Shown in pieces: positions 21,362-54,443 of a stretch of 64,000 nt of DNA (the first letter of the stretch is position 1; the number at the start of each line of letters is the position of its first letter). The position numbers were made by a program, and so were the translations under genes. The notes beneath the pieces are model-generated. The model did no database searches and was not told the origin of the DNA. It worked only from the letters and a program-made list of their open reading frames with translations. The stretch covers positions 186,001 to 250,000 of the IMG/VR virus record IMGVR_UViG_3300042010_000106. One strand, 5' to 3'.

Positions 21362-24300
21362 TTAACGACGGCCTGCTGCAAACAACGCAATAGGTGCACC
21401 GTTAATCATAGTTTGCCCGCCACTTGCATTACCGACTGTTACGCCTGCACCCATTGCGAGTTTAGACGCGGCCAGCGCGTTAGGTCGAGCCATTGCACCA
21501 TCGAAATTTTCTTCCGAAAGTAACAACGTGTAATCCTCGACTTGTAAGCCCCACAAACACAGAGCCATTGCACGCCAGTTATCATCGGTATAGCCATCGC
21601 CTTTACCAACGCCTTTCAACTGATCTTTAATCGTGAACATCTGTTTAAACAAGTGGGCGATTGGTTTGTCCTGATAAAAATCACGATAATCCGAGTCCAC
21701 TGCATCAACGAGCGTTTTCACTTTGATTTCAGATTTCGGAATGGAAACGTTGCCCTGTTCCATTCGCGTTCGCACACCAACCATGTCCACGTATTTCAGA
21801 CTGTATTGTTTTGCGATAAAGGTCGGGATATCCTCTTCAGGATCGCCCATATCAGCCGCAGCATCATCCAGAAGTTTAATACTGTTCCAACGGTCAGCAA
21901 GCAAAACTTTGCAATTACGCGCTTGCATAAGTGGCAGAATAACGTCTGAATAAATCAGGCTATGGTTTAAGCGATAACCCGGCAGCGGAATGATTTCACA
22001 CACTAGGTCTATACTTAAATTAAAGCCGTCGGTGGTGCCACCTACGAGACTGAAACTGTTATCTGTTACACCGGCGTCGATTGCCATCAAAGACGCTTTA
22101 CCGCTTTTCTTAACCTTTTCAACCTTGCCGTAAATATACGATTGCCCAAGGCGTTTGGAATTCCTGTAAACCGGTTTGATTTTGCAGGCGTTCTTACGCG
22201 TTGGATCTTCGCACCGCATAATGAAATCGTGGTTAGCGAGGAATGGGTTTGCAATCAACGGCGGGTTGGCCCCGAAGTTTTTCTCTGCCGATTCAGGGTC
22301 TTTCCGGTACGCTTCAACAATGAATGTTGAATTGCGTTTGAAGTTCGGGTTTACATCCCATGTTGCACGGTGAATGCCGTACATCGAGCGTGAATTCACA
22401 GCACGTTCAAGCAACACGTGAATCATATCGTTTTTTGCGGTCGGGCTAGAAACGTTCATGGCGTACGCTGGCAACACGTCGTCATATCCGCGTTCAATCA
22501 AAGCGTCTGCTGCTGTACGAACTGTTGCAAGGCTGTTCGCCAATGCGTCGTAAACTTCAAAGGCGTTGATCTTTACTTTGCCGCTGTCTTTCTCTGCGTC
22601 GAAGTATGCAATTTCGTCGATTGAAAAACCAAAGCGAGTTCGCCCCCGCATTACCCGTTTATCTGGCCCCATCGGGAAACAGTTGTGCTGGATAATTCCG
22701 TTGGCAACAAATGCGTGGTCGTCAACGTCCACAGTGATATCGTAAACGTTTTGACGGCCCGCATCTGTAACACTTTCAACTTCTTCGTAAAGCGCTTTGA
22801 CTGTCCCAAATTCTTTCGGGGCCACGGCAATAAAATCACCGGGCTTTAGTTTGTCGAGTTCAACCCATTGCGGATTTTTGTCGGCATCAAAAGAAAGTAT
22901 CGGGTGATTGCCTGTACCGGTCAGCTCAAAACCGTTTTTGGTCTTGAGCGTGTACACGTGTTTTTCACCGTTAGAATGCCAACCACACACGCGGTTGTAT
23001 CCATCTAAGCCCTTCACACGGTCGCCTAAGACGATTTCGGTAATGGGCACAGGGCCACGTTCGGTTTCAACGATGGTGCTGCCCACAACGCATTGCAGGC
23101 CCCGTACGCGGTAATCGACAAACGTGTCAGTCAGTTTGAAAAGCGTTTCGCCGTAAACACCTTCATAGTGACGCAGCATCGAGTGATATTCTTTGTACCA
23201 ACGCGTTTCGGTAAGTGCGCCGAAAAACGGTGTCCACAGCGTATCCTTTGCTTGCGTGTAAGTCAGTGCCGCAAATGTTCCCTGTAGCATTGTGGTACGT
23301 GACAGACCGTAGAATTGCGCAGGCTTTTGCAGCTTGAGCAAACGGTGAATCAAATACGGAAACATGTACGTGCCAACGGTGTGAGATTTGCCGCTGTTGT
23401 GACTGAGAATTGCGCCGGTCAAAAACTGGTGCGTTTCAGGCAAAGTAAAATCGTACGTCGCTTCGTATCCGCCGTCAGTTACCAACGCGATAGAATCGTC
23501 GTGCGTTCCTACAGACCATTTCCCGGCCCGCAGATTTGCCAATTGTTCGTCTGTCAGTGTAATCGACACGCCGGTAATCTGGTGTGGATAACCCGCGTTG
23601 AGCAACATGCTGCTGATATCTTGCAGAGCAGGCTTCGCAAGAAACACGCGTTCATTTCCTTGGCGGAAAAGTCCTTGCAGAAAAGCAGTTGTCGATTCTT
23701 CGTCGGCTATTCGAATCGCACGCGGAACAACGGTGTTGTAAAACATCGCGCCGACAGTTTCAGCCTGACGAATTACACCCTTGCCGAAAATGCGCTGACC
23801 ATATTGAACGGTCAGTGTGTCGCCGACCTTCACGTCTTTCAGTTTGGTGAACGTTTCATTCACAAAAATCGGATGATCGTGTGTGCCAGAAACGCGAAAA
23901 CCCATCGCCGTTTGTACACGGATAATGGGTTCTGGTTCAGCACGGAAAAAATGGGATGTAACTTCCATTTCTTTGCCGTTGTACACGTACCGATAGAATT
24001 CTGAGAATCCCACGGGCGCGTCTGGACTGATTTCGTCCATGTGTTCCATGCCTTGCGACGTGAAAACACTTGTCGAACCAATCACGCAACGTTGACCGGC
24101 GTTAATTGCCAGTTCGTTGTAGAAAGGCATTTTACCTTTCTTGATCATCTGCGAACGGCCCTTGCCACAGTTGGGACAAACGCCGTTGTGCAGCAGCGAA
24201 ACTTTCCGCTCCAATTTCGAATACGTGTCGTCAACTTTGTGCGAGTGCAGCAACCATTCAAGGTCAGTGCACTTGTTGTTGTAACACACGTCGTTGAAGG

Positions 24301-24658
24301 TAACGAGGCCCCAAATCAATTGCTCAAGAAAGGGGCGTTCATCACCGATGGTGCCGAAACGATCTTCAGTTACCCATTCGTAAAAATTGCGGGCTTCCGG
24401 CAAATCGGCGTCGTCAATTTTCATGTCTTTCGGCACGATAACTTTCGAGTCGATCAGGTTCCGAATAGATTCCGCAATGTTCGATTCTGTTTGCACGTTC
24501 ATGGAAGTGATAAGTTTAGTAGCAGACTTATTCATGTTTTCCAGATCGTCATGAATCGCCGCCCGACCAGTTTCTTTCAGAGAAAGCAAATAGTCGAACG
24601 GGTCTTTGTAGTTTCGTAGCGCTTTGTTAGCTTCTTTTGTTTCCTTGGATATTTTCAT
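21362..24658 (-). CDS. terL: large terminase subunit precursor containing two inteins
   Basis: Walker A reconstituted as NAGQR|SGKS after intein removal; Walker B FSIDEIAY; RNaseH-like nuclease MAIDAG..DNSFS, DRWNS, C-terminal DD; ~730 aa after splicing. Confidence 0.85.
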   Translation of the reverse strand: MKISKETKEANKALRNYKDPFDYLLSLKETGRAAIHDDLENMNKSATKLITSMNVQTESNIAESIRNLIDSKVIVPKDMKIDDADLPEARNFYEWVTEDRFGTIGDERPFLEQLIWGLVTFNDVCYNNKCTDLEWLLHSHKVDDTYSKLERKVSLLHNGVCPNCGKGRSQMIKKGKMPFYNELAINAGQRCVIGSTSVFTSQGMEHMDEISPDAPVGFSEFYRYVYNGKEMEVTSHFFRAEPEPIIRVQTAMGFRVSGTHDHPIFVNETFTKLKDVKVGDTLTVQYGQRIFGKGVIRQAETVGAMFYNTVVPRAIRIADEESTTAFLQGLFRQGNERVFLAKPALQDISSMLLNAGYPHQITGVSITLTDEQLANLRAGKWSVGTHDDSIALVTDGGYEATYDFTLPETHQFLTGAILSHNSGKSHTVGTYMFPYLIHRLLKLQKPAQFYGLSRTTMLQGTFAALTYTQAKDTLWTPFFGALTETRWYKEYHSMLRHYEGVYGETLFKLTDTFVDYRVRGLQCVVGSTIVETERGPVPITEIVLGDRVKGLDGYNRVCGWHSNGEKHVYTLKTKNGFELTGTGNHPILSFDADKNPQWVELDKLKPGDFIAVAPKEFGTVKALYEEVESVTDAGRQNVYDITVDVDDHAFVANGIIQHNCFPMGPDKRVMRGRTRFGFSIDEIAYFDAEKDSGKVKINAFEVYDALANSLATVRTAADALIERGYDDVLPAYAMNVSSPTAKNDMIHVLLERAVNSRSMYGIHRATWDVNPNFKRNSTFIVEAYRKDPESAEKNFGANPPLIANPFLANHDFIMRCEDPTRKNACKIKPVYRNSKRLGQSYIYGKVEKVKKSGKASLMAIDAGVTDNSFSLVGGTTDGFNLSIDLVCEIIPLPGYRLNHSLIYSDVILPLMQARNCKVLLADRWNSIKLLDDAAADMGDPEEDIPTFIAKQYSLKYVDMVGVRTRMEQGNVSIPKSEIKVKTLVDAVDSDYRDFYQDKPIAHLFKQMFTIKDQLKGVGKGDGYTDDNWRAMALCLWGLQVEDYTLLLSEENFDGAMARPNALAASKLAMGAGVTVGNASGGQTMINGAPIALFAAGRR
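22682..23092 (-). mobile_element. intein 2 (137-aa mini-intein) in terminase ATPase domain
   Basis: Starts CVVGSTIV, block B TGTGNHPIL, ends VYDITVDVDDHAFVANGIIQHN, +1 Cys; no endonuclease domain. Confidence 0.9.
23396..24088 (-). mobile_element. intein 1 (231 aa) in terminase Walker A, with degenerate LAGLIDADG remnant
   Basis: Starts CVIGSTSV, block B SGTHDHPIF, ends YDFTLPETHQFLTGAILSHN, +1 Ser; central AFLQGLF remnant. Confidence 0.85.
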
Positions 24659-36021: not shown

Positions 36022-37191
36022 TTACTTCTTTTTCTTTTTCTTCGCAGGTGCTTCGTCTTTCGACGATTTCTTTTTCTTCGAAGACTTTTCTTCTACCGCT
36101 GCCTTTTTCTTTTTCTTCGGCTTTGGTTCGTCGTCATCGTCATCGTCGATCTTGGTTTTCTTTTTCTTCTTCGGTTTGATGTCGTCTTCGTCGTCGTCAT
36201 CGTCTACCGATTTCTTTTTCTTTTTCTTGGCTTTTGGTTCGTCGTCTTCGTCGTCTTCATCGGCGAAAGGCTTTTTACCGCTGCCTTTTTTGCTTTTCTT
36301 CGACTTTGGTTCGTCGTCATCATCGTCATCGTCGAGGCTGCGTTTCTTTTTGCCTTTCGATTTCGGTTCGTCGTCTTCGTCATCGTCGTCATCGTCAGCA
36401 AGATCGGCGCCGACAACTTTCATACGCTTAACGTCTTCGTTCGCTTGCTCTTCAGTCATACGACCGGTTGCGTCGAGCAGTTTTTCGGTCAGTTCCCAAA
36501 CCAAATACGCGCGTTCTTCTTTGGTCAACGGAACAGCGCCGTCGTCCACTTTGTCGATGCTGTATTTGTCAGTACCCGGTGCATCTTTCTTGTATTTCAC
36601 TTTCACGTCGAAACCGTAATCGGCGTCGGTCGCGTCGTACTGTTCTTTCTTGCCGGTCTTTTTGTTTTTGCGCTTGTTGTCTTCCGACAATTCGTTCATA
36701 CGCATGATCATGGTCATGGTAAAACGAGCAACGCCTACCGGTGTCCAAGTTTCAGAATTGATATCCTTGAAACCGGTCTTCGCTTCTTCCTTGGTAGGCT
36801 TCGGCGATTTGCGCGGTGCGCCTTCTTCTTGCTTGTCACGGTCGATTGCGTTGAACAACCAGAAATCGCCGGAACGTGCAGGAGAGGTTTTGCGGTCTGC
36901 TGTGATCAGCGCTTTGAACGGGCAACGAACGCCTTTCTTCGGTTTGTCCGGGTTGGCCGGGTCGAAAGAAATGTCGTAACGAGGAATCTGGATTTCCTTG
37001 TTTTCGGCGCCGGTGTAAATGTTGATCCAGATTTGACGAACCTGCAACGGGGCAAGTGGCAGCAGACGAATCGGCTTCCATTTCTTGTCCACGTATTTGA
37101 TCATTTCAACGACTTCTTCCATACGGACAGAATCGTTGCGGGAATTGGTCTTGATAGAACCAAAACCCTTAAACGACGATAGACCACTCAT
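36022..37191 (-). CDS. ssb: gp32-like single-stranded DNA-binding protein with long D/K block tail
   Basis: IRLLP start, YGFDVKVKYKK..KYS in core; position next to recA; ~115-aa tail of alternating poly-D/E and poly-K. Confidence 0.65.
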   Translation of the reverse strand: MSGLSSFKGFGSIKTNSRNDSVRMEEVVEMIKYVDKKWKPIRLLPLAPLQVRQIWINIYTGAENKEIQIPRYDISFDPANPDKPKKGVRCPFKALITADRKTSPARSGDFWLFNAIDRDKQEEGAPRKSPKPTKEEAKTGFKDINSETWTPVGVARFTMTMIMRMNELSEDNKRKNKKTGKKEQYDATDADYGFDVKVKYKKDAPGTDKYSIDKVDDGAVPLTKEERAYLVWELTEKLLDATGRMTEEQANEDVKRMKVVGADLADDDDDDEDDEPKSKGKKKRSLDDDDDDDEPKSKKSKKGSGKKPFADEDDEDDEPKAKKKKKKSVDDDDDEDDIKPKKKKKTKIDDDDDDEPKPKKKKKAAVEEKSSKKKKSSKDEAPAKKKKKK

Positions 37192-37900: not shown

Positions 37901-38914
37901 TTATGCCAGCCCTTCGGCGCGCATATGGTCAAGCATTTTGAATCGTTCGTCATGGGTAAAGTATTCACCGATATCCATACTCAAACGAGCCAATCCGATT
38001 GGATCGACTTTCTTGGCAAGCTTCTGCACAAGAATAATCTGTTGATCTTTTTCCAAATCTTTTTCCATGGGTGCATTGTCTGCAAGCACGGCATGCAAAC
38101 CCATTTCCCCATCTTCGTCATCGCCACCATAAACCGCGTCGAGGCTGGTACTGAAATTCACTTCGGTACTGGTGCCTTCGTACAATTTTTTACGCTGCGT
38201 CTGCGGCACAGTGTAGGCAATTCCGTATTCGTGTTCTTTCGTTGTCGTCGTGGCGTTCTTTGCCCACGTTCCGATGTACGAAGTAAGCGCACCTTTGCGA
38301 CTGTCGTATTTATCCAGCGCAGTAATTACACTGCGGTGAATTGACTGCACCAAATCTCGATAGCTTGAATTGCTGCCGGGGTTGGTGGTGTGTGCTTTGG
38401 CGAGCTTGTTGTTATTTTTTATGTAGTGACCGATTACAGCGTTCCGGTATTCATAAAATTTCTTCAGGTACGGCGCCGAGATTTGCACAGCTTTGTACAT
38501 TTCGTGGCGACTGCACCGTCCAATTTCTGCGGCGTATTTGTCGAACTTAACTTGCTGCGCACGTGTAGGATTCGACATGAACAGGTTGTAGTCTCGCACG
38601 TAGCCTTCGGTATCCTTTACGAATGCACGAATGAAACGATGAATAAAACTACGTTCAATGCGGGTGTCACGAACGAGTGCAAACTTTTGGTGGCGGTCAC
38701 TCACCGACAAAAACGCAGCAAGCTTTTCGACCACGACTTCACGGTCAAGCGAACTGAGTTTTCGTTTCCGGTTGGTGGCAATCAGCAGCAGTAAATACTC
38801 AACCTGTGCGTCGAAAACGTTGGTGTAAAGAATCAGAGGCTCAAGGGCTTTGAACAGAAACATATCCATGATCTGCTGTATCTGTTCACCCGTCATATTT
38901 TTATCAGCAGACAA
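37901..38914 (-). CDS. phage sigma-70-like transcription factor
   Basis: Region 2-like SYRDLVQSIHRSVITALDKYDSRKGALTSYIGTWAK; region 3-like FSTSLDAVYGGDDEDGEMGLHAVLAD; GGAGG RBS. Confidence 0.75.
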   Translation of the reverse strand: MSADKNMTGEQIQQIMDMFLFKALEPLILYTNVFDAQVEYLLLLIATNRKRKLSSLDREVVVEKLAAFLSVSDRHQKFALVRDTRIERSFIHRFIRAFVKDTEGYVRDYNLFMSNPTRAQQVKFDKYAAEIGRCSRHEMYKAVQISAPYLKKFYEYRNAVIGHYIKNNNKLAKAHTTNPGSNSSYRDLVQSIHRSVITALDKYDSRKGALTSYIGTWAKNATTTTKEHEYGIAYTVPQTQRKKLYEGTSTEVNFSTSLDAVYGGDDEDGEMGLHAVLADNAPMEKDLEKDQQIILVQKLAKKVDPIGLARLSMDIGEYFTHDERFKMLDHMRAEGLA

Positions 38915-44404: not shown

Positions 44405-44410
44405 AGACCG

Positions 44411-44438
44411 AAAAAAGGGGACACTAGGCCCCCTTTTC
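44411..44438 (-). terminator. rho-independent terminator
   Basis: AAGGGGG-loop-CCCCTT then TTTT on minus strand after 44459..45040. Confidence 0.65.
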
Positions 44439-44458
44439 TCACGCCTTACGTTTCGAGA

Positions 44459-45040
44459 TTAATCGAAGTTGTAGGCTTTCTTTTTCTTGCCGTCTTTGCC
44501 AGCTTTTTTGGAAGATTTTTCTTCCTTGCCAGCTTTGGCTTTTTTGTCGCCTTTGGATTTCTTCGAAGGCTTTTCTTCGGCTTCGGCTTTCTTCGCTTTC
44601 TTGCCTTTGGTCGGAGCTTCTTCAGCTACTTCCTTTTTAGCTTTCTTCGAAGGTTTGGCTTCGGCTTCGGCCTTGGCTTTCTTACCCTTTACCGGGGCGG
44701 CTTCTTCTTTGGCAGCTTTGGCTTTCTTGCCTTTGGTCGGAGCTTCTTCAGCTTCGGCCTTGGCGCCTTTCTTGGCTTTGGCTGGCTTGGCGTCGGCCTT
44801 GTCAGCTTTAGCGCCTTTAGCAGCCTTTGCAGGAGCTTTGGCGGCTTTGGCCGGGGCAGCGGTGGTGCCGCTCAGTTTGCCTTCCAGTTCAGCGATTTGC
44901 GCGGTCACGTCGCTAACTTGAGCGTCGAGGGTTTCGCCGGTTTTGCCGTGGGTCTTTTGTGCTGCTTCCAGAGCGCGCAGGCCCTTACGCAGACGGGAGA
45001 TTTCCGCTTTACCGTTCAGGGTAACTTCGTTCTTAGCCAT
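44459..45040 (-). CDS. histone-like K/A/E-rich protein with N-terminal coiled coil
   Basis: Repeats EEAP(T/V)KGKKAK, KPSKK; ends KKKKAYNFD. Confidence 0.75.
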   Translation of the reverse strand: MAKNEVTLNGKAEISRLRKGLRALEAAQKTHGKTGETLDAQVSDVTAQIAELEGKLSGTTAAPAKAAKAPAKAAKGAKADKADAKPAKAKKGAKAEAEEAPTKGKKAKAAKEEAAPVKGKKAKAEAEAKPSKKAKKEVAEEAPTKGKKAKKAEAEEKPSKKSKGDKKAKAGKEEKSSKKAGKDGKKKKAYNFD

Positions 45041-45065: not shown

Positions 45066-45093
45066 AGACACGGCACACCGTTGCACCGTGTCT
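45066..45093 (-). promoter_or_regulatory. stable leader hairpin
   Basis: AGACACGG(TGCA)-ACGG-(TGTG)CCGTGTCT, ~25 nt before ATG of 44459..45040; no U-tract. Confidence 0.5.
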
Positions 45094-45153
45094 TGAATTA
45101 TTGCGAACTGATTAGAAGTTTTCTAAAGAGTTTAGAGCGCCGGGGCCGAGGAC

Positions 45154-45696
45154 TTATTCGTCGTCGTCTTCGTCTTCGTCGTCTTCTTCTTCTTCTTCGT
45201 CGTCTTCTTCTTCTTCGTCGTCTTCTTCTTCGTCTTCGTCGTCGTCGTCTTCTTCGTCTTCGTCGTCTTCTTCGTCGTCTTCTTCGTCTTCGTCGTCTTC
45301 GTCTTCGTCGTCTTCTTCTTCTTCTTCGTCGTCTTCTTCTTCTTCGTCGTCTTCTTCTTCGTCTTCGTCGTCGTCGTCTTCTTCTTCGTCGTCTTCTTCG
45401 TCGTCTTCTTCTTCTTCGTCGTCTTCTTCGTCGTCTTCTTCTTCTTCTTCGTCGTCTTCGTCGTCGTCGGACTCTTCAGCCTCTTCACGTTCCGAATCTA
45501 CGGAGTCGATGAATTCCAGAACGTCGTCGATGGTTTCCAGATCGTTGTCGGCCAGCGTAACCATGACCTGACGCAGAATGTCGAAGTTCAGCAGGTTCAG
45601 TGCATCGAGGCTCACTTGTGGTTTGGCTTTGCCTTTACCTTTTGCAGCGGCTTTCTTTGCAGGGGCTTTCTTTGCAGCAGCTTTCTTACCAGCCAT
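45154..45696 (-). CDS. protein with basic N-terminus and 104-residue poly-D/E tail
   Basis: MAGKKAAAKKAPAKK; short helical core; residues 77-180 only D/E; GGAG RBS. Confidence 0.8.
   Translation of the reverse strand: MAGKKAAAKKAPAKKAAAKGKGKAKPQVSLDALNLLNFDILRQVMVTLADNDLETIDDVLEFIDSVDSEREEAEESDDDEDDEEEEEDDEEDDEEEEDDEEDDEEEDDDDEDEEEDDEEEEDDEEEEEDDEDEDDEDEEDDEEDDEDEEDDDDEDEEEDDEEEEDDEEEEEDDEDEDDDE
45157..45468 (-). repeat. 312-nt (GAA/GAC)n codon tract with internal direct repeat
   Basis: Only two codons used; DDDDEDEEEDDEEEEDDEEEEEDDEDEDD occurs twice. Confidence 0.9.
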
Positions 45697-45877
45697 GTTT
45701 GTAACTCCGATTTATCTAGTGAGGTGTTATTGCGAATTAAGTATGCGGGCAGATTCACTTAACCTGAACCTGTCCACACTTTACAGTTTTCGTGTGAGGC
45801 GATTTCGCTGTATGCGCAACGAGGTTCGCCACTAACCTTTACAGTTTGTTAGAAGTCGTCAACACGTCGAGTGCGAC

Positions 45878-46453
45878 TTACTTCTTTTTTGCTTTTTTGC
45901 CACCGTCTTTGATGTCGGTAACTTTAGCTTTTTTCTTGCCTTCTTTTTCAGAAGAAGCTTTTGCACCGCGTCCGGATTGTTGCGAACCTTCCAGATCCAG
46001 CGCTTTGATTTCGTAAGAAACCTTGTCGTTGCTGGTGTACTTTACAGTTTCGCCATTGCCAGTTACGACGATGGTGTCACCTTCGAACTTCAGCACGCCG
46101 GTTGCTTCGGTGAACTTGCGACGTTGCAGAACGGTAATGCTACCGATTTCGTCAACCTTGCCGAGCTGTTCCAGAACATCGCTGTTGGCGAAAACGGAAA
46201 CGGCCATTTTCTTCGAAGCAGAAGAAACTTTGTGACGGAAAACGGTGTGCGTATCGGAACGCAGAACCAGATAGCCCGGAATTTCAACCGGCATGGTGGA
46301 GAAACCGGTTACGGTGAACAGGCCGCTCTTCATGCTGAATGGAGTTTTTGCGCTGGTGCCAGTCAGTTTGCGTTCCAGTTTGGTGGTACGCGAAACTTTA
46401 GTACGTGCAACGCCCGGTTTTGCGCCTTTGGTTTTGCTTTCAGTCTTAGCCAT
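45878..46453 (-). CDS. beta-rich hypothetical protein with K-rich termini
   Basis: 191 aa; AGGA RBS. Confidence 0.7.
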   Translation of the reverse strand: MAKTESKTKGAKPGVARTKVSRTTKLERKLTGTSAKTPFSMKSGLFTVTGFSTMPVEIPGYLVLRSDTHTVFRHKVSSASKKMAVSVFANSDVLEQLGKVDEIGSITVLQRRKFTEATGVLKFEGDTIVVTGNGETVKYTSNDKVSYEIKALDLEGSQQSGRGAKASSEKEGKKKAKVTDIKDGGKKAKKK

Positions 46454-46472
46454 GATTCTTTACTTCCTTACT

Positions 46473-47354
46473 TTACAGTTTTTTAGTGAGGTTAATGCTA
46501 ACGCCAATGTTAGCACTCGCCGGGAGGTGTTCTGCATGTGTTACCGCTTGAACGCTTGCGGAAATGTCGTCTGCACAAAGTGCGTTGAACAGTTCCAGAA
46601 CGCTTGGACGTGTCTTGAAATTAGCTACGTCAAAAACGATGTCGAGCGACGTTTCAATTCCTGTTGCTTTCATGAGGTTCCGAACAACCTTGGCGTAGGA
46701 AGCAGAAACATCAGAAAGTTTTGCAGAACTGTCGGTCAACCCGGCAGCATGAACGTAAACGCTAACGATCAGCTCTACGTCATTTACAGTTTGGTGCGAA
46801 GCGGTTTGCGATACCTTGTTGGAAATCGCTACGCTCGTTGTGTAGAAATCAGAACGACTGATTGCGTATTCTTCACCGGGCGCTTCGAAAGCTGCACCGG
46901 CAAAGCTATCAACCAATTGTTTTTGAATTTGTTTCAGCAGTGCATCAGCACGTGCGTTGATTTGTTCGTCATCCGCTGCGAGGAAAACGTAATTGGTTGC
47001 TTCCATGCCTTTCAGCATGTCATACAGCGCAGTCAGAGGTTTGATTGCAATGCCATTCTTGGCGAGCGAAAGAGGACGCAGCAAACTATAGGTTTGTCCG
47101 TCTTCCTCGTATTCTTTTACAGTTTCCACAACGGAGTTAACAAAGTTATCGACAGCGCCGATAAAGATTTCAACACGTGGAATGAAACGCACAGGCCATT
47201 CATATGCGTAGGTGCCTTGCACCGGGGTGAAATCGTTGGTGTTACGCGGGGCCGCTGTTACAGCCGGTTGCGGTGCTTCGCCCAAACGACGTTCACGCAT
47301 TGCAATCTGTGTGGTCTGGTGAATTTGTGGGTCAAGAACTTCTAATTCGTTCAT
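46473..47354 (-). CDS. hypothetical protein
   Basis: 293 aa; GAGG RBS. Confidence 0.7.
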   Translation of the reverse strand: MNELEVLDPQIHQTTQIAMRERRLGEAPQPAVTAAPRNTNDFTPVQGTYAYEWPVRFIPRVEIFIGAVDNFVNSVVETVKEYEEDGQTYSLLRPLSLAKNGIAIKPLTALYDMLKGMEATNYVFLAADDEQINARADALLKQIQKQLVDSFAGAAFEAPGEEYAISRSDFYTTSVAISNKVSQTASHQTVNDVELIVSVYVHAAGLTDSSAKLSDVSASYAKVVRNLMKATGIETSLDIVFDVANFKTRPSVLELFNALCADDISASVQAVTHAEHLPASANIGVSINLTKKL

Positions 47355-50802: not shown

Positions 50803-52644
50803 TTACTCGCCTTCTTGCACAGCAGCCAGAAGGGATTCCAGATTCACGCCAGCTTTTGCAACTGGTTTATCCATACCGACCAGCAGAGGCGAACCGTCTT
50901 TGTTCAGGCCGACCAGAATGTATTGCTTGTCTTCCATTGCAACGGTGTGGCCCGGTTCGATTTCGTAACCGATGATATCGAACACGTCTTGAGTTGCGTA
51001 CCACAGCTTAACGTAAGCGGTGATGTTGCGACCCGGCATCAGTTTTTCCAGACGGGCTTTTGCGTTTTCAACGAGTTCGGTAACGTCGAGCGGGAAAGTG
51101 GTTTCGGCTTCTTCTTCCTCTTCGAAAGATTCAGGCTCTTCCTCTTCTTCGTCTTCGTCGTCGAAGGTTTCCGGCTCTTCTTCTTCGTCGTCTTCGTCTT
51201 CTTCGTCGAAGGTTTCCGGCTCTTCTTCTTCGTCGCCTACTTCCGGCTCTTCCTCTTCTTCGTCTTCTTCCTGTTCCAGCAATTCATGCGATTCGAAATC
51301 CGCAGGCTTGCCAGTCGGCGCAACGTGACCTTGCGATTCTTGCAGTTTCGCAAAACCGTTTTCCAGCTCTTTTACTTTGCGTGCGATGTCGGCTTTGTTG
51401 GCGTCGGTCGCGGCGAAAGCGAAAGTAACGGTCATCATGTTGCTACCGTTCTGAGTTGCAGTCGCCGAAACCAGATCAATGTTATAGGCTTCTTGCAGAC
51501 CCATCAGAACGCATTCACGCAGGTGGTCTTTTACGTCCAGAGTGGTGTCGTAATCGAACGCGTCAACGTCCAGCTTTTTAACGGTTTGCGACGGCGCGGT
51601 ACGGTTGCGAGGAACAGCGGTGCCAGTGCGCGGCAAATCTTTACCGGTGTAAACGAAACCGGAACCGTCACGGGCGATTTCTTCAACGCTGCATTTGAAA
51701 CCGCGATCAGTTTCAACGGTGTTGTTTTTGAAAGTTTTGGTAACGGTGTGAGTTACCTTGCCGACTTTCAGCGCTTGGTTTTTCACTTCGTTACGGGACA
51801 CGGCAGCCGGTTTTTTCGCAGCAGCAGCTTTTGCGAGTGCAGCGGCGTGCAATTCTTCCAGCTCTTCGGCGTATTCGTCGGAGATTACAGCGAAGCCACC
51901 ACCGACCAGACTTTTGCGAACGTCTTCGATTTGGAATTCTTCACCGCTTTCAGTTACGCAGCGACCGGATTTGTAAGTGGTTTCAACGGTGAAATCTTCG
52001 CCGTCGATTGCAACGACTTTGCCGCGAATGTCTTTCGTGGTCAGCAGGCCGGGAGCGCTGAACAGGGTATCAACAGCATTTGCAGCGGTCGAAGCTTTTG
52101 CAGCCTTGGCAGGTTTTGCGGTCACGCCGCCTTTGGCAACAGCGCCACCTTTTGTAGCAGCAGCTTTTACAGCGCTTGCAGGAACGGCGGTTTTGTTGTC
52201 GGTGGTAACGAAGCCTTTGCCTTTACGAACGACGTTCGCCAGTTCGATACGTTGACCATCGGCCAGCACGACAATGCCTTTCGAACGGATTTGTTTTTCA
52301 ACGGCAACGCCGTTTACTTTTTTGCCGTCGAGTTCGTCAGCGGTAACAGCGGCGGCAGGTGCACGGCCAGCAGGAGCTTTTGCAGCAGGAGCAGCGGCAG
52401 CGGTTGCCTTCTTGCTGTTCTCGGCAGGAGCTTTTGCAGTTGCGCCTTTACCTGCAACGTCGATGAACAGACCTTTGCCGCGATTGTACAGATCAGCAGC
52501 CGGATATTCAGCGCCCGATTCGGTGCGGATGATCCCTTTGCTGGTCAGGTGTTTCACAATCACTTCTTGCACCTTGGTTTCTTTCGGGGTGCCTTTGCGG
52601 GAAATGATGTTCAGAGTACGGCCAGCGTGGTTAACAGTAGACAT
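50803..52644 (-). CDS. multidomain protein: four repeated beta modules, A/K-rich linkers, acidic tract
   Basis: Repeats KGIIRTESG..Y, KGIVVLADG..I, GRCVTESG..F, NTVETDRG each followed by G.GF; AGGAG RBS; strong codon bias suggests high expression. Confidence 0.8.
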   Translation of the reverse strand: MSTVNHAGRTLNIISRKGTPKETKVQEVIVKHLTSKGIIRTESGAEYPAADLYNRGKGLFIDVAGKGATAKAPAENSKKATAAAAPAAKAPAGRAPAAAVTADELDGKKVNGVAVEKQIRSKGIVVLADGQRIELANVVRKGKGFVTTDNKTAVPASAVKAAATKGGAVAKGGVTAKPAKAAKASTAANAVDTLFSAPGLLTTKDIRGKVVAIDGEDFTVETTYKSGRCVTESGEEFQIEDVRKSLVGGGFAVISDEYAEELEELHAAALAKAAAAKKPAAVSRNEVKNQALKVGKVTHTVTKTFKNNTVETDRGFKCSVEEIARDGSGFVYTGKDLPRTGTAVPRNRTAPSQTVKKLDVDAFDYDTTLDVKDHLRECVLMGLQEAYNIDLVSATATQNGSNMMTVTFAFAATDANKADIARKVKELENGFAKLQESQGHVAPTGKPADFESHELLEQEEDEEEEEPEVGDEEEEPETFDEEDEDDEEEEPETFDDEDEEEEEPESFEEEEEAETTFPLDVTELVENAKARLEKLMPGRNITAYVKLWYATQDVFDIIGYEIEPGHTVAMEDKQYILVGLNKDGSPLLVGMDKPVAKAGVNLESLLAAVQEGE

Positions 52645-53840: not shown

Positions 53841-54443
53841 TTAGGCTTTTTTAGCTTTCGGAGCTTTGGCAACCGGGGCAGCAGCAGGAGCGGCTTTCGG
53901 TGCTTTGGCTTTAGCGCCACCTTTCACAGCAGGTGCAGGAGCGGCAACAGCAGCAGCTTTCGGAGCTTTTGCTTTCGGTGCTTTGGCAACTGGTGCAGTT
54001 ACGGCAGCGGCTTTAGCAGCCTTCAGTTTTGGAGCGCCGGTTTTGGTAACGCCGACAGCAACAGGAGCAGCGGCAACTTTCGGAGCTTTGGCTGGCTTGG
54101 CAGCTTTTGCTTTTTCAGCGGCTTTTGCTTCTTTGGCTTTCAGAGCAGCAGCGGCGCGTTCTTCGCCTTGCAGTTTCTTCAGAGCGGCTTTGTCGTCGGC
54201 GATTTCAGCGGTCAGAACGGTGACGGCATTGGACAGGGTTTCAACGGCGGTTGCCGATGCTTTCTGAACGTTGGCGACAACTTTCGGAGCGGTAGCCAGA
54301 ACCAGTTTCGAATGCGCTTTCACGTGAGCGTTGGCAGCAGTCAGTTGTGCTTTCACGGTGGCGAGGGTAGCCACTTTGCCAGCGATGGTTTTGGTCAGAG
54401 CGGATTCGGCTTTGGACAGCTTTGGAGTGGTAACGGTGGTCAT
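53841..54443 (-). CDS. histone H1-like (AlgP-type architecture) K/A/P-rich protein
   Basis: N-terminal coiled coil then KAPKA/KAAKPAKAPK repeats. Confidence 0.75.
   Translation of the reverse strand: MTTVTTPKLSKAESALTKTIAGKVATLATVKAQLTAANAHVKAHSKLVLATAPKVVANVQKASATAVETLSNAVTVLTAEIADDKAALKKLQGEERAAAALKAKEAKAAEKAKAAKPAKAPKVAAAPVAVGVTKTGAPKLKAAKAAAVTAPVAKAPKAKAPKAAAVAAPAPAVKGGAKAKAPKAAPAAAPVAKAPKAKKA

What the first reader, a model, noticed from the sequence alone, without database searches (positions are those of the whole stretch)
45154..45696. Protein with 104 consecutive Asp/Glu residues behind a histone-like basic N-terminus
Seen: 180 aa made of a ~26-aa K/A-rich head, a ~50-aa helical core and 104 uninterrupted D/E encoded only by GAA and GAC, with a ~29-residue internal duplication. 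It has an RBS, two upstream AAACTGTAAA motifs, and is co-oriented with a K-rich histone-like gene directly downstream. Established: long acidic tails act as nucleic-acid mimics or chaperones (Firmicute RNAP delta subunit, nucleoplasmin). Inference: chaperone or decondensation partner for the phage's histone-like proteins, a DNA mimic against host DNA-binding defences, or the scaffold of the proposed condensate.
Basis: partly seen in the sequence, partly recalled or inferred. Interest (0 to 1): 0.72.

Follow-up and report, generated by a model that had tools for sequence, protein, structure and literature searches.

The report
Phage protein with 100-residue polyanionic tail
A jumbo Pseudomonas-type phage makes, at the time it copies its DNA, a small protein that ends in 104 consecutive acidic residues; the protein is conserved and always sits next to lysine-rich DNA-coating-like proteins, so it probably acts as their electrostatic partner or as a DNA look-alike.

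Summary
ORF 45154..45696 (-) encodes 180 aa: a K/A-rich head (1-26), a helical hairpin (27-76) and 104 uninterrupted D/E (77-180), coded only by GAA and GAC.

The window lies in a complete 312-kb jumbo phage related to Pseudomonas phages Lu11, HRDY3 and PaBG. The protein is not an assembly quirk. Fourteen syntenic orthologues, three from cultured phages, keep the same head, core and tail; tails are 83-109 residues in the full-length genes but one, which has 58.

In the poly-E orthologues GAA and GAG are interleaved far more than chance allows. That argues for selection for a genetically stable tract.

The gene sits in a three-gene cassette: a basic beta-core protein, the acidic protein, and a lysine-rich coiled-coil protein with an aromatic-acidic tip. 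The cassette is seen in Lu11-like phages, PaBG and NCTB; the acidic/lysine-rich pair also in Dickeya, Erwinia and Yersinia phages.

It is driven by two copies of AAACTGTAAA. In this genome that motif precedes DNA polymerase, clamp loader, SSB, primase, thymidylate synthase and SbcCD. Capsid and tail genes use a different motif.

Best reading (about 0.4): a replication-phase polyanion that competes with DNA for the phage's own lysine-rich proteins. Main rival: a Gp44-like DNA mimic aimed at host proteins. Expression, partners and the exact tract length remain untested.

The parts
45154..45696 (-). CDS of the acidic-tail protein (P0001, 180 aa, net charge -107)
   Evidence: 14 syntenic orthologues
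45619..45696 (-). Residues 1-26: K/A/P-rich basic head. Its composition resembles the start of the lysine-rich tail of the downstream protein
   Evidence: predicted disordered, pLDDT about 41
45469..45618 (-). Residues 27-76: conserved helical hairpin core, itself net acidic. No detectable relatives outside the clade
   Evidence: alignments A1/A2; pLDDT 84-87; pN/pS about 0.26; profile search of 1.84 billion proteins found only a fragment of a near-identical relative
45157..45468 (-). Residues 77-180: 104 consecutive D/E coded only by GAA and GAC. Coding strand free of T
45290..45384 (-). Copy 1 of the 95-nt exact direct repeat inside the tract
   Evidence: offset 129 nt
45161..45255 (-). Copy 2 of the 95-nt exact direct repeat
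45705..45708 (-). Shine-Dalgarno GGAG, conserved in the orthologues
45780..45789 (-). Proximal AAACTGTAAA (motif A, replication-class promoter motif)
   Evidence: annotated as 'putative middle/late promoter' at the same place in Lu11
45838..45847 (-). Distal AAACTGTAAA. Two or three tandem copies are present in all Lu11-like orthologous loci
45066..45093 (-). 12-bp RNA hairpin without a U tract between the acidic gene and the K-rich gene. It may be a processing, stability or attenuation element
   Evidence: z = -2.35
44459..45040 (-). Downstream gene: N-terminal coiled coil, then a lysine-rich tail (52 K, net +27), then a C-terminal aromatic-acidic tip (YNFD here; Y/F-D-x-F-E in relatives)
   Evidence: phrog_36478, unknown function
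44409..44441 (-). Intrinsic-terminator-like hairpin followed by U6, which ends the acidic/K-rich transcription unit
   Evidence: -26 kcal/mol, z = -3.3
45878..46453 (-). Upstream cassette gene: 191 aa with basic termini (net +18) and a beta-rich core. It has its own motif A at 46472-46481
   Evidence: (phrog_22271); model quality too low to classify

Best explanation
P0001 is an abundantly made, replication-phase, largely disordered polyanion. It works as the electrostatic counterpart of the phage's own lysine-rich DNA-coating proteins. These are the co-transcribed coiled-coil K-rich protein, the basic protein encoded just upstream, and probably the poly-K blocks of the phage SSB tail. The roughly 100-charge D/E tail acts as a DNA-like competitor. 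It would bind the lysine-rich tails without folding, keep them off RNA and ribosomes, and make their binding to replicating phage DNA fast-exchanging and reversible. In that way it would set how condensed the phage DNA-protein mass is, and could help strip those proteins off DNA. The short basic head and the helical hairpin would place the protein on DNA or on a partner. Shown here: the architecture, conservation of tail length but not tail sequence, selection on codon arrangement, the conserved gene cassette, the operon structure, and a promoter motif shared with replication genes. Inferred, not shown: expression timing, binding to the K-rich proteins, and any effect on DNA compaction.
For: (1) The tail is conserved as a charge, not as a sequence. 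Full-length orthologous genes on contigs of 140-314 kb and in the three isolates carry 83-109 D/E; one on a 39-kb contig has 58, and two genes cut by a contig end are not counted. The tails are pure poly-E in 11 loci (HRDY3 and ten IMG/VR) and D/E mixes here, in Lu11 and in PaBG. (2) In the poly-E genes the longest run of one codon is 2-5. Shuffles of the same codons average 7-9, and for seven of the eight poly-E loci analysed at most 9 of 2000 shuffles (none for six of them) were as short; for L014 it is 6%. This indicates selection to keep a long tract genetically stable. (3) The core is under purifying selection, pN/pS about 0.26. (4) The gene order basic beta protein, acidic protein, K-rich coiled-coil protein holds in all 14 Lu11/PaBG-type loci and in NCTB. 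The acidic/K-rich pair also holds in Dickeya JA29, Erwinia Alexandra and Yersinia fHe-Yen9-02, whose portals are only 35-42% identical. (5) The acidic and K-rich genes share one unit: tandem promoters, then a hairpin without a U tract, then a terminator only after the K-rich gene. (6) Motif A directly precedes DNA polymerase, clamp loader, a 221-aa polymerase-family protein, SSB, primase, thymidylate synthase, SbcC and SbcD. Tail sheath, a 1203-aa virion protein and the capsid operon carry a different motif, GTAATTTA. (7) The same phage gives its SSB a 125-aa tail of alternating poly-D and poly-K blocks. Polyelectrolyte interactions are therefore a recurring design in its replication proteins (also in NCTB). 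(8) From established knowledge: prothymosin-alpha with histone H1, and the nucleoplasmin poly-Glu tracts, show that disordered polyanions bind lysine-rich chromatin proteins very tightly and speed their exchange on DNA.
Against: There is no direct evidence of binding; the complex prediction returned no answer. The charges do not balance one to one (-107 against +27 and +18). Gene adjacency alone is weak evidence for physical interaction. The promoter class is inferred from motif association, not from transcript data. The lysine-rich proteins are not shown to bind DNA. A polyanion this strong would also bind many host proteins, so a host target is not excluded.
Confidence: 0.4

Rival explanations
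1. A DNA-mimic decoy aimed at the host, as in Bacillus phage SPO1 Gp44. The basic head tethers the protein to DNA. The disordered polyanion occupies the nucleic-acid-binding surfaces of host RNA polymerase, nucleoid proteins (HU, MvaT/MvaU, AlgP-type H1-like proteins) or defence nucleases.
For: The general architecture matches Gp44: a small N-terminal module, then an acidic disordered region with no basic residues. Gp44 binds RNAP beta and beta' through a 67-aa region that is 57% D/E (PMC8208478). High expression is implied by the tandem promoters. The phage encodes its own sigma factor, so host sigma-dependent transcription is dispensable (PaBG gp118).
Against: No sequence or fold similarity to Gp44 or any other mimic was found. 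The gene carries the replication-class motif rather than lying in an early host-takeover module. The conserved pairing with a phage lysine-rich protein is not explained by a purely host-directed role.
Confidence: 0.25
2. A head-assembly component: either a scaffold-like polyanion that nucleates or fills the prohead, or an internal head protein packaged with the lysine-rich proteins.
For: There is a weak PHROG match of residues 3-71 to a head scaffolding family (phrog_2932, E = 0.0018). T4 proheads contain highly acidic internal peptides and basic internal proteins (established knowledge). A 628-aa protein just upstream of the capsid gene also carries a 47-residue D/E tract.
Against: The promoter motif is the one used by replication genes. 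Capsid and sheath genes use a different motif. The 14 major virion bands of PaBG do not include gp124-126 (PMC7412058 Table 1). This is weak evidence, because such proteins stain and digest poorly. The PHROG match covers mostly low-complexity basic sequence.
Confidence: 0.08
3. An RNA-polymerase accessory factor analogous to the delta subunit of Firmicute RNAP. The acidic tail would displace nucleic acids from RNAP and sharpen promoter selectivity in favour of the phage sigma factor.
For: The outline is the same as delta: a small N-terminal domain plus a roughly 100-aa acidic tail (established knowledge). A phage sigma factor is encoded about 6.2 kb downstream on the gene strand (window 37901..38914; Sigma70_r2).
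Against: No match to the delta N-terminal domain or to any Pfam family, even at E up to 1. Nothing links it to RNAP genes. The pairing with the K-rich gene is left unexplained.
Confidence: 0.07
4. A bulk sink for counter-ions (Mg2+, polyamines), or a non-specific solubiliser or 'shield' protein, with no specific partner.
For: A pure carboxylate polymer made in large amounts. The tail sequence is free to vary between E-only and D/E mixes.
Against: It does not explain the conserved hairpin core under purifying selection, the basic head, or the conserved cassette.
Confidence: 0.05
5. An assembly or slippage artefact: the tract is inflated or the ORF is not a real gene.
For: The tract holds a 95-nt exact repeat. 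Short-read contigs from public runs break inside it, and the read tool masks it. The exact count of 104 could therefore be off by one 43-residue unit.
Against: Three cultured phages with finished genomes have tails of 86, 99 and 109 residues at the same locus. All 11 IMG/VR relatives have the gene. The N-terminal part is conserved in this reading frame. Synonymous codons are interleaved non-randomly.
Confidence: 0.02

Closest known systems
Bacillus phage SPO1 Gp44 (DNA-mimic inhibitor of RNA polymerase; PMC8208478)
   Same: A phage protein with a small N-terminal nucleic-acid-directed module followed by an intrinsically disordered, strongly acidic region that lacks basic residues and acts by charge mimicry of nucleic acid.
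   Different: The Gp44 acidic region is 67 aa and 57% D/E, lies in the middle of a 237-aa protein, and follows a folded Xis-like DNA-binding domain; Gp44 is an early host-takeover gene. Here the tail is 104 aa and 100% D/E, it is C-terminal, and the N-terminal part is a basic disordered head plus an acidic helical hairpin. No similarity was found. The gene carries the replication-class promoter motif and is paired with a lysine-rich phage protein.
Prothymosin-alpha / histone H1 and the nucleoplasmin or NAP-type acidic tracts (eukaryotic histone chaperones)
   Same: A disordered polyanion whose function depends on charge and length rather than sequence. It would act on lysine-rich, H1-tail-like DNA-binding proteins as a competitor with DNA. 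This is what the conserved acidic/K-rich gene pair suggests.
   Different: There is no sequence or fold relationship and no nucleoplasmin core. The system is bacterial-viral, the partner has a coiled coil rather than a winged-helix globular domain, and no binding has been demonstrated.
Delta subunit (RpoE) of Firmicute RNA polymerase
   Same: A small N-terminal domain followed by a roughly 70-100-residue D/E tail that acts as a nucleic-acid mimic.
   Different: There is no HARE-HTH domain (no Pfam match at E up to 1). The relatives' hosts are Gram-negative, and no link to RNAP was found.
Acidic proteins of the distant relatives (NCTB 294 aa, Dickeya JA29 266 aa, Erwinia Alexandra 267 aa, Yersinia fHe-Yen9-02 260 aa)
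   Same: They occupy the same position, directly before the K-rich coiled-coil gene. They share the MAK(A)K start, basic linkers and long D/E tracts.
   Different: They are built from two to four helix-loop-helix modules, each followed by an interrupted acid tract whose longest uninterrupted D/E run is 20-26 residues, instead of one hairpin and one tail of about 100. Profile comparison aligned only the basic linker (probability 63%), so homology is not demonstrated.

Membership tests
SPO1 Gp44-type DNA mimic | Folded N-terminal dsDNA-binding domain (Xis-like winged helix) | tested here: not met
   The model shows a disordered head and a two-helix hairpin. No significant match by PDB sequence, Foldseek or VIA-align.
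SPO1 Gp44-type DNA mimic | Long acidic disordered region devoid of basic residues | tested here: met
   104 consecutive D/E, more extreme than the 57% D/E of Gp44.
SPO1 Gp44-type DNA mimic | Binds host RNAP beta/beta' and inhibits growth | not testable with these tools
   Needs pull-down and expression assays.
SPO1 Gp44-type DNA mimic | Early host-takeover expression | tested here: inconclusive
   The gene carries the motif shared with DNA polymerase, SSB, primase and related genes. Timing is inferred, and no transcript data were available.
RNAP delta subunit (RpoE) | N-terminal HARE-HTH domain | tested here: not met
   No Pfam family at E up to 1 for residues 1-80.
RNAP delta subunit (RpoE) | Acidic C-terminal disordered tail | tested here: met
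Nucleoplasmin / NAP histone chaperones | Nucleoplasmin beta-core pentamer or NAP fold | tested here: not met
   No Pfam hit. The model is helical. No fold match.
Nucleoplasmin / NAP histone chaperones | Binds lysine-rich chromatin proteins through poly-acidic tracts | not testable with these tools
   Only context supports it: a conserved operon with a K-rich protein. The complex prediction gave no answer.
Structured DNA mimics (Ocr, ArdA, Arn type) | Folded protein that displays carboxylates in B-DNA-like geometry | tested here: not met
   The tail is homopolymer-like and low-complexity. Its long predicted helix is a low-confidence default (pLDDT 60-73).
Phage head scaffolding protein (phrog_2932) | Significant profile match and co-regulation with capsid genes | tested here: not met
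   E = 0.0018 over the basic head and hairpin only. The capsid operon and sheath genes use a different upstream motif.
SAP / HeH / Rho_N helix-extension-helix motif | Profile match to the roughly 35-aa motif with basic DNA-contacting residues | tested here: not met
   The resemblance in hydrophobic spacing is my impression only. No Pfam match in P0001 or in the distant acidic proteins. The hairpin is net acidic.

The most novel reading that the evidence does not exclude
The Lu11/PaBG-group jumbo phages, which lack the Chimalliviridae protein-shelled nucleus, build a membrane-less replication compartment by complex coacervation of a dedicated polyelectrolyte set. The set would comprise a roughly -100 polyanion (this protein), two or more lysine-rich polycations, and an SSB with an alternating poly-D/poly-K tail. 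The polyanion would tune the fluidity of the compartment and exclude host DNA-binding proteins.
Probability: 0.15. Interest if true: 0.85.

Novelty: new variant of a known kind. Interest (0 to 1): 0.62.

Why it matters
Charge-driven, disordered polyanion/polycation pairs are established regulators of eukaryotic chromatin. In phages they are almost undescribed; the only comparable case found was SPO1 Gp44. This study finds a conserved, apparently strongly expressed phage family with one of the purest long acidic tails imaginable. It is genetically linked to H1-tail-like proteins and to the replication regulon. It also shows a clear signature of selection for a stable tract: synonymous codons are interleaved, or D is mixed with E. 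Three cultured phages (Lu11, PaBG, HRDY3) carry it, so the idea can be tested directly in Pseudomonas laboratory strains. If the partner model holds, it would show how large non-nucleus-forming phages organise hundreds of kilobases of replicating DNA. It would also provide a minimal natural polyelectrolyte system for biophysics.

Tried and rejected
- **Pfam:** P0001 and seven neighbours gave nothing. Repeats at E up to 1, including the distant acidic proteins, also gave nothing meaningful.
- **tblastn against 50,697 phage records:** the whole protein gave no match because of low-complexity filtering. Residues 1-80 gave only an E = 0.5 hit to HRDY3.
- **Word-indexed protein searches:** residues 1-80 of P0001 and residues 1-62 of the K-rich protein both returned nothing.
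- **Profile search of the core against 1.84 billion representatives:** it found only an 80-aa fragment of a near-identical relative and an unrelated tail-fibre repeat protein.
- **Structure-based searches:** the PDB sequence search, Foldseek and VIA-align gave only generic helical matches (Z of 5.4 or less). ESM Atlas searches gave no usable leads.
- **AlphaFold2 of the upstream 191-aa protein:** pLDDT 47, not usable.
- **Complex prediction of P0001(1-90) with the K-rich protein:** no answer, so it counts neither for nor against binding.
- **The search for related loci with the K-rich protein:** found nothing because of low complexity.
- **T-rich 9-mers as a possible second promoter:** they are the antisense of lysine codons, so the idea was rejected.
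- **Read check of the tract length:** the tool masks the repeat and the contigs break inside it, so the result is inconclusive.
- **Lu11 genome paper:** not held in the library.
- **PaBG annotation 'similar to Utp1 assembly factor':** judged a low-complexity artefact.

Full report
**Observation.** The minus-strand ORF 45154..45696 encodes 180 residues.
- Residues 1-26 are a K/A/P-rich basic head.
- Residues 27-76 are a helical segment.
- Residues 77-180 are 104 uninterrupted Asp/Glu (48 D, 56 E), coded by only two codons, GAA (56) and GAC (48).

In the rest of this genome Glu is 86% GAA, but Asp is only 53% GAC. Exclusive GAC therefore has a probability of about 5e-14. The coding strand of the tract has no T in 312 nt. 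A GGAG lies 9 nt before the ATG. Two AAACTGTAAA motifs lie 91 and 149 nt upstream of the ATG. The window has 15 copies of this 10-mer, all on the gene strand, against 0.18 expected. The lysine-rich gene 44459..45040 follows 113 nt downstream. All elements of the observation are confirmed.

**Where it is.** The window is bases 186001-250000 of a 312,325-bp virus record with direct terminal repeats, estimated 100% complete.
- Its portal is 70%, 72% and 55% identical to those of Pseudomonas phages HRDY3, Lu11 and PaBG. It is 35-42% identical to those of phage NCTB and of Dickeya, Erwinia and Yersinia jumbo phages. This is the group that the PaBG paper calls 'Lupandier' (PMC7412058).
- Near-identical flanking sequence occurs in three rhizosphere metagenomes from three different studies.
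- The window also holds the portal, terminase, DnaB-like helicase, UvsX-like recombinase, SSB, topoisomerase II, a 5'-3' exonuclease and a sigma-70-type factor.

**It is a conserved gene, not an artefact.** At the syntenic position HRDY3, Lu11 (Lu11_0161) and PaBG (PaBG_00125) encode proteins of 176, 159 and 150 aa with the same plan. Their acidic runs are 109, 99 and 86 residues.
- All 11 related IMG/VR loci carry the gene.
- Tails are 83-109 residues in the full-length genes on contigs of 140-314 kb, and 58 on a 39-kb contig. Two further genes are cut by a contig end.
- The head and a roughly 40-residue two-helix core are conserved (alignments A1 and A2). The core has a crude pN/pS of about 0.26.
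- The tail sequence is not conserved. Eleven loci (HRDY3 and ten IMG/VR) have pure poly-Glu. The window, Lu11 and PaBG have D/E mixtures.
- In the poly-Glu genes GAA and GAG are interleaved so that the longest run of one codon is only 2-5. Shuffles of the same codons average 7-9. For six of the eight poly-Glu loci analysed none of 2000 shuffles was as short; the other two gave 0.45% and 6% (L012, L014). I read this as selection against a pure triplet repeat, meaning selection to keep a long tract stable.
- The window's phage reaches the same end by mixing GAC with GAA. Its own longest identical-codon run (5) is not significantly short.
- The exact number 104 could not be verified against reads. 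The read tool masks 45151-45476, and public short-read contigs break inside the tract. An error of one 43-residue repeat unit is possible. The cultured relatives show that tails of about 100 residues are real.

**No relatives outside the clade.** Searches by Pfam, PDB sequences, a profile search of 1.84 billion representative proteins, Foldseek and VIA-align and the ESM Atlas gave nothing meaningful. One weak PHROG match to a head-scaffolding family (E = 0.0018) covers mainly the basic head. AlphaFold2 predicts a disordered head and a confident hairpin (pLDDT 84-87). The tail comes out as a low-confidence helix. The hairpin is itself net acidic, so the only basic part is the 26-residue head. 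The head's composition resembles the start of the neighbour's lysine-rich tail.

**A conserved three-gene cassette.** In all Lu11/PaBG-type loci the order is as follows.
- A basic protein of about 185 aa with a beta-rich core, net about +18.
- The acidic protein, net -56 to -108.
- A protein of about 180-205 aa, net +19 to +31. It has an N-terminal coiled coil, a lysine-rich tail built from short repeats that each pair two acidic residues with a proline and a lysine cluster, and a C-terminal aromatic-acidic tip (Y/F-D-x-F-E; alignment A6).

NCTB has the whole cassette: 171 aa basic, 294 aa acidic, and a 194-aa coiled-coil K/R-rich protein ending in an EEFDFDN tip. Dickeya JA29, Erwinia Alexandra and Yersinia fHe-Yen9-02 also have an acidic protein (260-267 aa) directly before a K-rich coiled-coil protein with the same kind of tip. 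In these distant phages the acidic protein is modular: it has helix-loop-helix units, each followed by an interrupted acid tract whose longest pure D/E run is 20-26 residues. Profile comparison does not establish homology with the Lu11 type. The pairing is therefore conserved more deeply than the sequence.

**Transcription unit and regulon.** A strong hairpin followed by U6 lies just after the K-rich gene. Between the acidic and K-rich genes there is only a 12-bp hairpin without a U tract. The two genes therefore look co-transcribed from the tandem motifs.

Genome-wide, the exact 10-mer AAACTGTAAA occurs 38 times, always on the local gene strand. Its 8-mer core is the most enriched upstream word. 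Lu11's annotators marked the same motif as 'putative middle/late promoter'.
- The annotated genes directly behind this motif are all DNA-metabolism genes: DNA polymerase, clamp loader, a 221-aa polymerase-family protein, SSB, primase, thymidylate synthase, SbcC and SbcD.
- A second motif, GTAATTTA, precedes both tail-sheath paralogues and a 1203-aa virion protein. A close variant of it precedes the capsid operon.
- All Lu11-like orthologues keep two or three tandem copies of the first motif before the acidic gene.

I infer that the gene belongs to the replication-phase regulon and is strongly expressed. No transcript data were available.

**A wider habit of the phage.**
- The SSB (36022..37191) ends in about 125 residues of alternating poly-Asp and poly-Lys blocks. 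The NCTB SSB does the same.
- A 613-aa protein (50803..52644) combines A/K-rich and Glu-rich repeats.
- A 200-aa A/K/P-rich protein lies at 53841..54443.
- A 628-aa protein before the capsid gene has a 47-residue acid tract.

**Interpretation.** What is conserved is charge and length, not sequence. Together with the hard-wired pairing with lysine-rich proteins and the replication-class promoter, this points to a polyelectrolyte partner role. The tail would compete with DNA for the lysine-rich tails, chaperone them, and keep their DNA binding dynamic. Prothymosin-alpha does this for histone H1, and nucleoplasmin poly-Glu tracts do it for basic nuclear proteins (established knowledge). I put this at about 0.4.

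The main rival (0.25) is a host-directed DNA mimic like SPO1 Gp44. Gp44 has a DNA-binding N-domain and a 67-aa, 57% D/E disordered region that binds RNAP beta and beta' (PMC8208478). A head-assembly role is disfavoured by the promoter class and by the absence of gp124-126 among the 14 major PaBG virion bands, although that absence is weak evidence. A delta-subunit-like role lacks any domain support. The complex prediction gave no answer and is not evidence either way.

**Novelty.** No paper describing this family was found. The records I read (HRDY3, Lu11, PaBG) call it hypothetical, and PaBG adds 'similar to Utp1', a low-complexity artefact. It is a new variant of a known kind, namely acidic disordered chaperones and DNA mimics. 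Its unusual points are a pure tail of about 100 residues, a signature of selection at the codon level, and a conserved polyanion/polycation operon in a phage. Cultured relatives make it directly testable.

Noticed in passing
window 36022-36400 (C-terminal part of the SSB gene 36022..37191, minus strand); also L045:550-1848 (NCTB): The phage SSB (phrog_15004) ends in about 125 residues of alternating poly-Asp/Glu and poly-Lys blocks and finishes in poly-K rather than an acidic tip. The NCTB SSB has the same blocky design, with D/E runs up to 21.
   Followed up: partly
window 46041, 46783, 47116, 47454, 47805, 49066 (minus strand): Six further AAACTGTAAA copies lie inside coding regions in the 3.3 kb upstream of the acidic gene. 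All are in the same reading frame (x-T-V-K/N). Three of them keep their position in nearly all Lu11-like relatives. They may be a battery of internal promoters feeding the cassette.
   Followed up: partly
whole genome (G000); e.g. 11697, 302839, 159393-163004, 4650: There are two upstream motif classes. AAACTGTAAA precedes replication and nucleotide-metabolism genes. GTAATTTA precedes tail sheath, virion and capsid-operon genes, and in 11 of its 12 occurrences it lies upstream of a gene.
   Followed up: yes
window 50803-52644 (minus strand): A 613-aa protein with no family match. It combines A/K-rich stretches with a Glu-rich repeat region (acid blocks separated by P-E-T/S-F).
   Followed up: no
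window 53841-54443 (minus strand): A 200-aa protein with 68 Ala and 36 Lys in PAKA/KAPK-type repeats (net +28). It resembles H1-tail or AlgP-like proteins and has no family match. Two motif-A copies lie inside the upstream 5'-3' exonuclease gene.
   Followed up: no
genome 5158-7044 (outside the window, L039): A 628-aa protein of phrog_20988 ('ATPase') sits upstream of the major capsid gene. It carries a 47-residue D/E tract followed by a lysine-rich stretch, and is a better candidate than P0001 for a scaffold-like acidic protein.
   Followed up: no
window 21362-24658 (minus strand): The large terminase ORF is 1098 aa, against 720 aa in PaBG. The PHROG match comes in two stretches, and the best covers only residues 660-1098. 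This suggests an N-terminal extension or an inserted element.
   Followed up: no
window 37901-38914 (minus strand): A phage sigma-70-type factor (Sigma70_r2, just above the Pfam cut-off), syntenic with PaBG gp118. It is a candidate reader of one of the two promoter motifs.
   Followed up: partly
L002, L005, L008-L012, L014 acidic tails: In the poly-Glu orthologues GAA and GAG alternate almost strictly, with a longest same-codon run of 2-5. This codon-level pattern could be used to tell selected homopolymer tracts from slippage products.
   Followed up: yes
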